DNA of 64,000 nt from Ruditapes philippinarum (Eukaryota), in contig NW_026852143.1 of assembly GCF_026571515.1 (NCBI RefSeq), forward strand, positions 1 through 64,000, written 5' to 3'. The notes beneath the pieces were generated by a model. The model was not told the origin of the DNA, did no database searches, and saw only the letters and a program-made list of their open reading frames with translations. Positions 63,024 to 63,314 of the stretch are shown in pieces; positions within the stretch are counted from its first letter, which is position 1; each line of letters begins with the position of its first letter. Made by a program: the position numbers and the translations under genes.

Positions 63024-63132
63024 TTCTGGGAAGTGATCTCGGACGAGCACGGTATTGACCCCACCGGTACATACCACGGAGATTCGGACCTCCAACTTGA
63101 GCGTATCAACGTTTATTATTGTGAAGCTACAG
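63024..63132 (+). CDS. TUBB: Beta-tubulin exon 2a ([37 protein letters not shown]), 109 nt
   Basis: TTTCAG acceptor and AG|GTAATT donor; encodes residues 20-55. Confidence 0.93.
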
Positions 63133-63205
63133 GTAATTAGGCACGCTTCAGAATGTTGTAACCATTGTGCATTAACCTTGTTTTATTTATCCATTATTTT
63201 AATAG

Positions 63206-63314
63206 TTCTGGGAAGTTATCTCAGATGAGCATGGAATTGACCCCACCGGTACATACCACGGGGATTCAGACCTCCAACTTGAGAGAATCAATGTCTACTA
63301 TAATGAAGCTACTG
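63206..63314 (+). CDS. TUBB: Beta-tubulin exon 2b ([37 protein letters not shown]), 109 nt; gene continues beyond the window
   Basis: TTTTAATAG acceptor and TG|GTTAGT donor; encodes residues 20-55. Confidence 0.95.

What the first reader, a model, noticed from the sequence alone, without database searches (positions are those of the whole stretch)
63024..63314. Beta-tubulin with a tandemly duplicated exon 2: candidate mutually exclusive exons switching Asn52/Cys52
Seen: one exon 1 (59557-59613) is followed by two 109-nt copies of exon 2, each with an intact AG/GT, separated by 73 nt. They differ at 15 nt. Thirteen changes are synonymous (12 codons) and two fall in one codon (TGT Cys vs AAT Asn, residue 52). 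The flanking intron sequences are unrelated. This argues for an old duplication with both copies under purifying selection, not an assembly stutter or a dead exon. Because 109 is not divisible by 3, including both or neither shifts the frame, so only one can be used per productive mRNA. Known: tubulin isotypes normally come from separate genes, Asn is the usual residue in the VYYNEA motif, and this segment lies in the H1-S2 loop region involved in lateral protofilament contacts. Inference: one gene makes two isotypes by splicing, one with an extra, possibly redox- or modification-sensitive cysteine. I do not know of a described case but cannot search the literature.
Basis: partly seen in the sequence, partly recalled or inferred. 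Interest (0 to 1): 0.88.

Follow-up and report, generated by a model that had tools for sequence, protein, structure and literature searches.

The report
Beta-tubulin with two alternative second exons
One clam beta-tubulin gene carries two tandem copies of its second exon, and RNA data show that each mRNA uses one or the other, giving two tubulins that differ only at residue 52 (Asn or Cys), a residue at the side-to-side contact between microtubule protofilaments.

Summary
Exon 1 (59557-59613) is followed by two 109-nt copies of exon 2 (63024-63132 and 63206-63314) with intact AG/GT. They differ at 15 nt: 13 synonymous changes plus TGT (Cys52) versus AAT (Asn52).

In three independent studies of this species, exon 2a joins directly to exon 3, skipping 2b. 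Exon 2b also joins to exon 3, and no 2a-2b joint was listed. Reads entering either copy carry this gene's own exon 1.

Two sister paralogs in the genome keep a decayed remnant of 2a, including the TGT codon, upstream of their exon 2. So the doublet and the Cys codon predate those gene duplications. Only this gene has kept 2a intact, with just 1-4 third-position changes since.

Asn52 equals beta:N54 in structure numbering, which is reported to engage the lateral microtubule bond.

This is therefore a new member of a known kind, with an independent origin in a bivalve (the genome matches Ruditapes philippinarum).

The function of Cys52, conservation in other molluscs and protein-level evidence remain untested. 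The scan holds a note on this same stretch (s1-803743) and none on other DNA.

The parts
59557..59613 (+). Exon 1 coding part (residues 1-19, starts MREI), GT donor at 59614
   Evidence: One search gives the translation. It is the only exon-1-like sequence in the window. Its 3' end is the consensus of the loose ends in front of both exon 2a (39 reads) and exon 2b (83 reads) in run X23, and it differs from exon 1 of paralogs A and B.
59614..63023 (+). Intron 1 (3410 nt), ending in a pyrimidine-rich acceptor with CAG; a near-consensus branch motif lies about 20 nt upstream of exon 2a
   Evidence: The acceptor region is conserved in the 2a remnants of paralogs A and B. No convincing docking/selector complementarity was found.
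63024..63132 (+). Exon 2a (109 nt, residues 20-56 with Cys52), one of two mutually exclusive copies
   Evidence: It is unique in the genome, at least 13 nt from every other exon 2 copy. It joins directly to exon 3 in X1 (contig depth 6600), X2 (1523) and X23 (41 reads, 37 starts). The three variable sites seen in reads are all third-position synonymous (table 3, mapped by hand).
63133..63205 (+). 73-nt spacer between the two copies; no spliced-out form was listed in any run
   Evidence: No 633>707 joint appears. Its 3' part (branch motif and pyrimidine tract) is shared with paralogs A and B.
63172..63176 (+). Predicted branch-point motif (TTAAC) for exon 2b; the branch A at 63175 is 43 nt from the exon 2a donor and 30 nt from the exon 2b acceptor
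   Evidence: Read from the sequence. A TAAC motif at the matching place is kept in paralogs A and B. Its use as a branch point is inferred, not shown.
63206..63314 (+). Exon 2b (109 nt, residues 20-56 with the usual Asn52), the other mutually exclusive copy
   Evidence: It is 3-8 nt from exon 2 of the neighbouring paralogs. It joins to exon 3 in X1 (depth 5991), X2 (8451, contigs identical to the reference) and X23 (35 reads).
63315..64000 (+). Start of intron 2, which runs on beyond the window to C630:67589; exon 3 and exon 4 lie outside the window
   Evidence: Pfam Tubulin and Tubulin_C match exons 3 and 4.

Best explanation
This is a functional beta-tubulin gene of a venerid clam; the genome matches Ruditapes philippinarum. 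Its second exon exists as a tandem pair of mutually exclusive exons. Every productive mRNA joins exon 1 to either 2a or 2b and then to exon 3. One gene therefore makes two beta-tubulins identical except for residue 52: Cys from 2a, Asn from 2b.

Shown:
- Both splice paths exist.
- Both paths share the same exon 1.
- No double inclusion was listed.
- Exon 2a has been under purifying selection since before two gene duplications.

Inferred, how exclusivity is enforced. The likely branch point of 2b lies only 43 nt from the donor of 2a. That is the same geometry as alpha-tropomyosin exons 2/3, so the 73-nt spacer probably cannot be removed (steric hindrance). As a fail-safe, including both exons gives a stop 7 codons into 2b, and skipping both gives a stop 20 codons into exon 3. 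Such mRNAs would be nonsense-mediated decay targets.

Inferred, function. Residue 52 is the Asn that contacts the neighbouring protofilament. The Asn/Cys choice therefore probably tunes lateral lattice contacts or adds a reactive thiol. The share of 2a differs between samples, which suggests regulated use.
For: Anatomy.

RNA evidence (laid on C630:62500-68199):
- Joint 633>5091 (2a to exon 3, GT..AG): X1 contig depth 6600, X2 depth 1523, X23 41 reads from 37 starts.
- Joint 815>5091 (2b to exon 3): X1 depth 5991, X2 depth 8451, X23 35 reads.
- No 2a-2b joint was listed.
- Loose ends in front of 2a (39 reads, agreement 1.0) and 2b (83 reads, agreement 0.93) are this gene's exon 1. Its sequence differs from paralogs A and B at 4-5 of 32 positions.
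- Loose ends behind exon 3 are the start of exon 4.

Selection:
- 2a versus 2b has dS about 0.93 and dN about 0.036.
- Paralogs A and B carry a decayed 2a with 17- and 24-nt net deletions and a stop, yet share the TGT codon.
- Since the split, 16 changes map to the remnant stem, spread over all codon positions. Only 1-4 map to this gene's 2a, all at third positions. Binomial P is 0.006 to 3e-6.

Stop codons on double inclusion or double skipping.

Residue 52 at the lateral bond: PMC10519996 names beta:N54 with R88 and D90. These equal N52, R86 and D88 in sequence numbering. PMC11275713 Table 1 places residues 48, 56 and 57 at the lateral interface.
Against: - Only four runs were laid. One (X21) was uninformative, and two are short assembled contigs whose depth is a poor measure of abundance.
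- Some reads laid on exon 2b carry paralog-like letters, so the 2a:2b ratios are rough.
- A filter for human-like reads may have removed reads from this conserved gene.
- The listing threshold is 3 reads, so rare 2a+2b mRNAs cannot be excluded.
- There is no protein-level evidence for the Cys52 form.
- There is no evidence from other species. No Cys52 appeared among 240 listed homologues and fragments, and no metagenome contig matched.
- The branch point and the steric mechanism are predictions. A 73-nt intron is not intrinsically unspliceable in invertebrates.
Confidence: 0.9

Rival explanations
1. The mutually exclusive splicing is real, but the Asn/Cys difference has no distinct protein function. 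The two exons persist because each has become necessary for splicing in different tissues or stages (subfunctionalisation at the RNA level), or because the pair buffers expression.
For: The two exons differ by one residue only. Paralogs A and B lost 2a yet look like intact genes over the exons that could be examined, so the Cys form is dispensable in those genes. The genome has at least 16 beta-tubulin exon 2 copies, so isotype diversity is already plentiful.
Against: The TGT codon is old: it is shared with the remnants. It has been retained while all other non-synonymous change was excluded. The switched residue is one named as engaging the lateral bond (PMC10519996). All 16 other intact exon 2 copies in the genome and all 240 listed homologues and fragments that show this motif have Asn, Thr or Ser here, never Cys.
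Confidence: 0.25
2. Exon 2a is an unproductive or noise exon. Its inclusion lowers output of the gene, and the Cys52 protein is not made in meaningful amounts.
For: There is no protein evidence. The remnants in paralogs A and B still have splice-site-like flanks, which shows that such sequences can persist without coding.
Against: 2a joins in frame to exon 3 with 2b skipped, at levels similar to 2b: about 52% of junction depth in X1, 15% in X2 and 54% in X23. The 2a reading frame has been conserved since the split, with only third-position changes. Its splice signals are at least as close to consensus as those of 2b (inference).
Confidence: 0.04
3. Exons 2a and 2b belong to different transcription units, or the doublet is an assembly artefact.
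For: None found. It was considered because the genome has many near-identical tubulin genes, seven of them on this contig.
Against: The window has a single exon 1. The same exon 1 sequence precedes both copies in RNA. DNA-like runs hold up to 0.89 of the words across the doublet. The same 2a-spacer-2b layout is present in decayed form at two other loci.
Confidence: 0.01

Closest known systems
Drosophila betaTub97EF mutually exclusive exons 4B/4C (Hatje and Kollmar 2013; Findeisen et al. 2014, PMC4202323; Myachina et al. 2017, bioRxiv 10.1101/185827)
   Same: It is a beta-tubulin gene in which a tandemly duplicated internal exon, inside the conserved core, is spliced in a mutually exclusive way. 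One gene gives two isotypes, with different isoform ratios under different conditions.
   Different: That case is in a different lineage (reported as characteristic of Diptera) and a different exon (a central 40-residue segment, not residues 20-56). The fly exons differ at 13 of 40 residues; here they differ at 1 of 37. In flies the minor form is about 15-fold rarer, whereas here the two forms are of similar order in two of three informative runs. The origins are independent.
Alpha-tropomyosin exons 2/3 (steric-hindrance model of mutually exclusive splicing; from my own knowledge of Smith and Nadal-Ginard 1989, not checked here)
   Same: The adjacent alternative exons are separated by a short intron, and the branch point of the downstream exon lies about 42 nt from the upstream donor. 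Here the predicted distance is 43 nt.
   Different: The branch point here is only predicted from a conserved TAAC motif. The minimal donor-to-branch distance for bivalve spliceosomes is not known to me.
Voltage-gated sodium channel exon 5N/5A pairs (from my own knowledge, not checked here)
   Same: These are mutually exclusive exon pairs of equal length whose products differ by one or very few residues. Usage is regulated by developmental stage or tissue.
   Different: The protein family is unrelated, and those pairs are conserved across vertebrates. Conservation of this pair beyond one species is untested.
Vertebrate beta-tubulin isotypes encoded by separate genes, such as TUBB3 (PMC11275713)
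   Same: Isotype-specific residues in the H1-S2 region of the lateral interface change microtubule dynamics. Isotypes also differ in cysteine content (residue 239 is Ser in TUBB3 and Cys in the others; Table 1 of that paper).
   Different: In vertebrates the variants come from separate genes with separate promoters and different C-terminal tails. Here one promoter and one tail serve both forms, and only residue 52 changes.

Membership tests
Beta-tubulin (Tubulin/FtsZ superfamily) | Tubulin GTPase domain and tubulin C-terminal domain | tested here: met
   Pfam PF00091 matches exon 3 (E 1.4e-35) and PF03953 matches exon 4 (E 6.7e-45).
Beta-tubulin (Tubulin/FtsZ superfamily) | Beta-type sequence: MREI N-terminus, near-identity to named beta-tubulins, acidic C-terminal tail | tested here: met
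   Exon 1 starts MREI. Exon 4 is up to 99% identical to proteins named tubulin beta-4B or beta-2B. The tail is rich in Glu and Asp.
[quoted passage not shown] 2011 as quoted in PMC4202323) | Neighbouring exons of the same length, same reading frame and phase, similar sequence, and conserved splice sites | tested here: met
   Both are 109 nt and enter in phase 0 after the 57-nt exon 1. They are 86% identical in nucleotides and share 35 of 36 full codons. Both have AG/GT.
[quoted passage not shown] | Transcripts contain exactly one member of the cluster | tested here: met
   Joints 2a>exon 3 and 2b>exon 3 are present in X1, X2 and X23. No 2a>2b joint was listed. Both copies are preceded by the same exon 1. 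Limits: listing threshold of 3 reads; only four runs laid.
[quoted passage not shown] | Including both or neither destroys the reading frame | tested here: met
   109 is not divisible by 3. A stop appears 7 codons into 2b when it is read after 2a, and 20 codons into exon 3 when that is read directly after exon 1.
Steric-hindrance type of mutual exclusion | Donor of the upstream exon too close to the branch point of the downstream exon | tested here: inconclusive
   The predicted branch A at 63175 is 43 nt from the 2a donor, and the motif is conserved in paralogs A and B. Neither the branch point nor the minimal distance was measured.
Competing RNA structure type (docking site and selector sequences, as in Dscam) | A conserved intronic element complementary to a sequence in front of each alternative exon | tested here: inconclusive
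   The inverted-repeat scan of 59614-64000 gave only AT-rich pairs at 72-88% complementarity, none paired with both exons. No orthologous sequences were available to test conservation.
Decay-enforced exclusivity (nonsense-mediated decay) | Double-inclusion mRNA is made and then degraded | not testable with these tools
   The premature stop exists in silico. Testing this needs RNA from cells in which nonsense-mediated decay is blocked.

The most novel reading that the evidence does not exclude
The Asn52/Cys52 switch is a regulated, tissue- or stage-specific isotype switch made by splicing. It changes the lateral protofilament bond at the very residue that contacts the neighbouring M-loop, or makes that bond sensitive to oxidation. 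The same doublet would be conserved in other venerid or heterodont bivalves. That would make it a natural single-residue experiment on how the lateral interface sets microtubule behaviour.
Probability: 0.3. Interest if true: 0.75.

Novelty: new member of a known kind. Interest (0 to 1): 0.6.

Why it matters
Tubulin isotypes are almost always made by separate genes. The only described splicing-based case I found is the dipteran betaTub97EF. A second, independent case in a mollusc shows that exon duplication with exclusive splicing is a recurrent route to tubulin diversity.

This case is unusually clean. One promoter, one C-terminal tail and one changed residue are involved, and that residue (Asn52, which is beta:N54 in structure numbering) is reported to engage the lateral microtubule bond. 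It therefore offers a natural single-residue variant for testing how the H1-S2 loop tunes lattice stability, and whether a cysteine there confers redox or modification sensitivity.

The decayed 2a remnants in two sister paralogs also give a rare internal control. They show what happens to the same exon when selection is lifted.

Tried and rejected

2. Protein database searches for a Cys52 form:
- Exon 4 as query gave 120 listed hits, none with Cys52.
- The 46-aa open frame around 2a gave 120 listed short fragments, none with Cys52.
These are weak negatives.

3. A degenerate DNA pattern for the end of exon 2a found nothing in metagenome contigs.

4. Literature. No paper holds the Cys52 peptide strings. 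No paper links mollusc or Ruditapes tubulin with mutually exclusive or alternative splicing of this gene.

5. The docking/selector RNA structure scan found nothing convincing.

6. A search for 2a remnants upstream of exon 2 in 13 other paralogs found none; only A and B have one.

7. Run X21, labelled RNA-Seq, gave sparse, mostly intronic coverage and no junctions, so it is uninformative.

8. Rejected readings: assembly stutter, separate first exons, dead pseudo-exon (see rivals).

The N run at 32496-32638 was left alone.

Full report
**Observation**

- Exon 1 (59557-59613) encodes 19 residues starting MREI and ends at a GT donor.
- After a 3410-nt intron come two 109-nt exons: 2a (63024-63132) and 2b (63206-63314).
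- Each has an AG acceptor and a GT donor, and a 73-nt spacer separates them.
- They differ at 15 positions. Thirteen are synonymous (12 codons; Arg46 carries two). Two lie in codon 52: TGT (Cys) in 2a and AAT (Asn) in 2b.
- The repeat ends 2 nt outside each exon (family D1).
- The window holds no second exon 1.

The window is the first 64 kb of a 189,465-bp contig, C630, in a 1.41-Gb assembly. I fetched the downstream DNA and found the rest of the gene intact.
- Exon 3 is at C630:67590-67945 (356 nt, residues 56-174).
- Exon 4 is at C630:75147-75959 (residues 175 to the end, with an acidic tail).
- Pfam Tubulin and Tubulin_C match these exons.
- Exon 4 is up to 99% identical to proteins named tubulin beta-4B or beta-2B.

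**Organism**

A neighbouring open reading frame in the window is 100% identical to an NCBI protein of Ruditapes philippinarum. That protein lies on a contig of the same length, 189,465 bp. The genome is therefore the Manila clam or something indistinguishable from it.

**The gene family as an internal control**

The genome has at least 16 further exon 2 copies, six of them on the same contig.
- Every intact copy encodes Asn52, apart from one Thr52. Only 2a encodes Cys.
- Exon 2b is 3-8 nt from exon 2 of the neighbouring paralogs. Exon 2a is at least 13 nt from every copy, so no recent donor for it exists in the assembly.

The key result concerns two paralogs.
- Paralog A has its exon 2 at C630:93667. 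Paralog B has its exon 2 at C11788:32208.
- Each carries a decayed copy of 2a directly upstream of its exon 2.
- The remnants share the acceptor region and the donor, and they keep the TGT codon.
- They have net deletions of 17 and 24 nt. Paralog A's remnant also has a stop.
- No other paralog has such a remnant within 1.4 kb upstream of exon 2.

Synonymous divergence over the coding exons is about 0.35 (this gene versus A), 0.64 (versus B) and 0.25 (A versus B). So the exon doublet and the Cys codon predate the split of this gene from the A/B ancestor.

I polarised changes using the consensus of all other exon 2 copies.
- Sixteen changes map to the shared remnant lineage, spread evenly over codon positions (5, 7 and 4).
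- Only one change maps to this gene's 2a, plus three ambiguous ones. All four are at third positions.
- The imbalance has a binomial P of 0.006 using shared changes only, and 3e-6 using all 34 differences to remnant A.

This is direct evidence that 2a has been kept by purifying selection as coding sequence in this gene, while the same exon decayed where it was not needed.

**RNA evidence**

The run search found 24 runs of one species, from 15 studies.
- Fourteen are transcriptome-sized contig sets holding 0.39-0.61 of the sampled words.
- Six are DNA-like sets holding 0.61-0.89.

I laid two contig sets (X1, X2) and two raw RNA runs (X21, X23) on C630:62500-68199, which contains 2a, 2b and exon 3.

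| Junction | X1 contig depth | X2 contig depth | X23 reads |
|---|---|---|---|
| 2a to exon 3 (633>5091, GT..AG) | 6600 | 1523 | 41 (37 starts) |
| 2b to exon 3 (815>5091, GT..AG) | 5991 | 8451 | 35 |

- A further 14 X23 reads show the 2b-to-exon 3 joint displaced by 2 nt. These are probably from an allele or a paralog.
- No joint removing the 73-nt spacer was listed in any run.
- In X23, 39 reads entering 2a and 83 entering 2b carry the same upstream sequence: the 3' end of this gene's exon 1. It differs from exon 1 of paralogs A and B at 4-5 of 32 positions.
- Reads leaving exon 3 continue into exon 4.
- The three variable sites seen inside 2a are all third-position synonymous changes (table 3, mapped by hand).
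- The share of 2a among exon 2-to-exon 3 junctions is about 52% (X1), 15% (X2) and 54% (X23). This suggests variable use.

Caveats on these numbers:
- Contig depth is a poor measure of abundance.
- Some reads laid on 2b carry paralog-like letters.
- A filter may drop human-like reads from this conserved gene.
- X21 gave sparse intronic coverage only, and no junctions.

**Mechanism**

Shown:
- One exon 1 serves both forms, and each mRNA carries one of the two exons 2.
- Both forms continue in frame.
- Including both exons gives a stop 7 codons into 2b. Skipping both gives a stop 20 codons into exon 3.

Inferred:
- A TAAC motif 30 nt upstream of 2b is conserved in paralogs A and B. It is the likely branch point, and it lies only 43 nt from the 2a donor.
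- By analogy with alpha-tropomyosin exons 2/3 (my own knowledge), the spacer would then be too short to splice out. Nonsense-mediated decay would remove any leakage.
- I found no docking/selector structure, but without orthologues that test is weak.

**Functional reading**

- Residues 48, 56 and 57 are listed at the lateral interface (H1' and the H1'-S2 loop) in PMC11275713, Table 1. Variants there change microtubule dynamics.
- PMC10519996 names beta:N54, with R88 and D90, as engaged in the lateral microtubule bond.
- In this gene's sequence numbering those residues are N52, R86 and D88, and residue 54 is Ala. The paper therefore uses the +2 structure numbering.
- So the residue switched here is the very Asn named there.
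- Whether Cys52 weakens or alters this contact, or acts as a reactive thiol, is untested.

**Comparison with what is known**

Mutually exclusive exons in a beta-tubulin are already described for Drosophila betaTub97EF exons 4B/4C. They are reported as characteristic of Diptera (PMC4202323; bioRxiv 10.1101/185827).

The present case differs in three ways.
- It is in a bivalve.
- It involves a different exon.
- The two forms differ by a single residue.

I found no paper describing it. I class it as a new member of a known kind.

**Limits**

Conservation in other molluscs is therefore untested.
I could not look up annotated full-length isoforms or Cys52 proteins of full length.
- The searches that were possible found no Cys52 form elsewhere. 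These are weak negatives.

Noticed in passing
Contig C630 beyond the window: exon 2 copies at about 87.4, 93.7, 122.7, 128.8, 136.4 and 143.1 kb: The gene sits in a cluster of at least seven beta-tubulin genes on one 189-kb contig, on both strands. Their exon 2 copies differ by only 3-8 nt from each other, apart from the one at 128.8 kb, which is 11-15 nt from the rest. This points to recent expansion or gene conversion.
   Followed up: partly
L005 (C630:93.5 kb) and L007 (C11788:32.0 kb), just upstream of exon 2: The decayed exon 2a remnants in paralogs A and B still have an acceptor-like CAG with a pyrimidine tract and a GTAAT donor. Whether they are still spliced in as frame-breaking exons was not tested.
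   Followed up: partly
L019 = C13633:99636-102731: An exon 2-like stretch with several stops and about 86% identity over part of the exon. It is probably a beta-tubulin pseudogene fragment.
   Followed up: no
L002:4300-9600 (C630:68300-73600), intron 3 of the gene: The intron is filled with tandem arrays from at least two repeat families, with units of roughly 300-340 nt. They show up as recurring near-identical short open frames on both strands.
   Followed up: no
Window 30169-35443: Open frames here belong to a CARD-domain protein. One is 100% identical to NCBI LOC132750459 of Ruditapes philippinarum, with relatives in Mya arenaria and Dreissena polymorpha. An N run lies at 32496-32638.
   Followed up: partly
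Run X21 laid on C630:62500-68199 (table 7): This run is labelled RNA-Seq but gives low, mostly intronic coverage. Several of its loose ends begin with GATC, as in proximity-ligation (Hi-C type) libraries. The label may be wrong.
   Followed up: no
Exon 3, L042 positions 5188 and 5197 (C630:67687 and 67696): Nearly all reads in X23 and most contig depth in X1 and X2 carry T where the assembly has C. The reference individual seems to carry a minor allele, or reads from a near-identical copy dominate.
   Followed up: no
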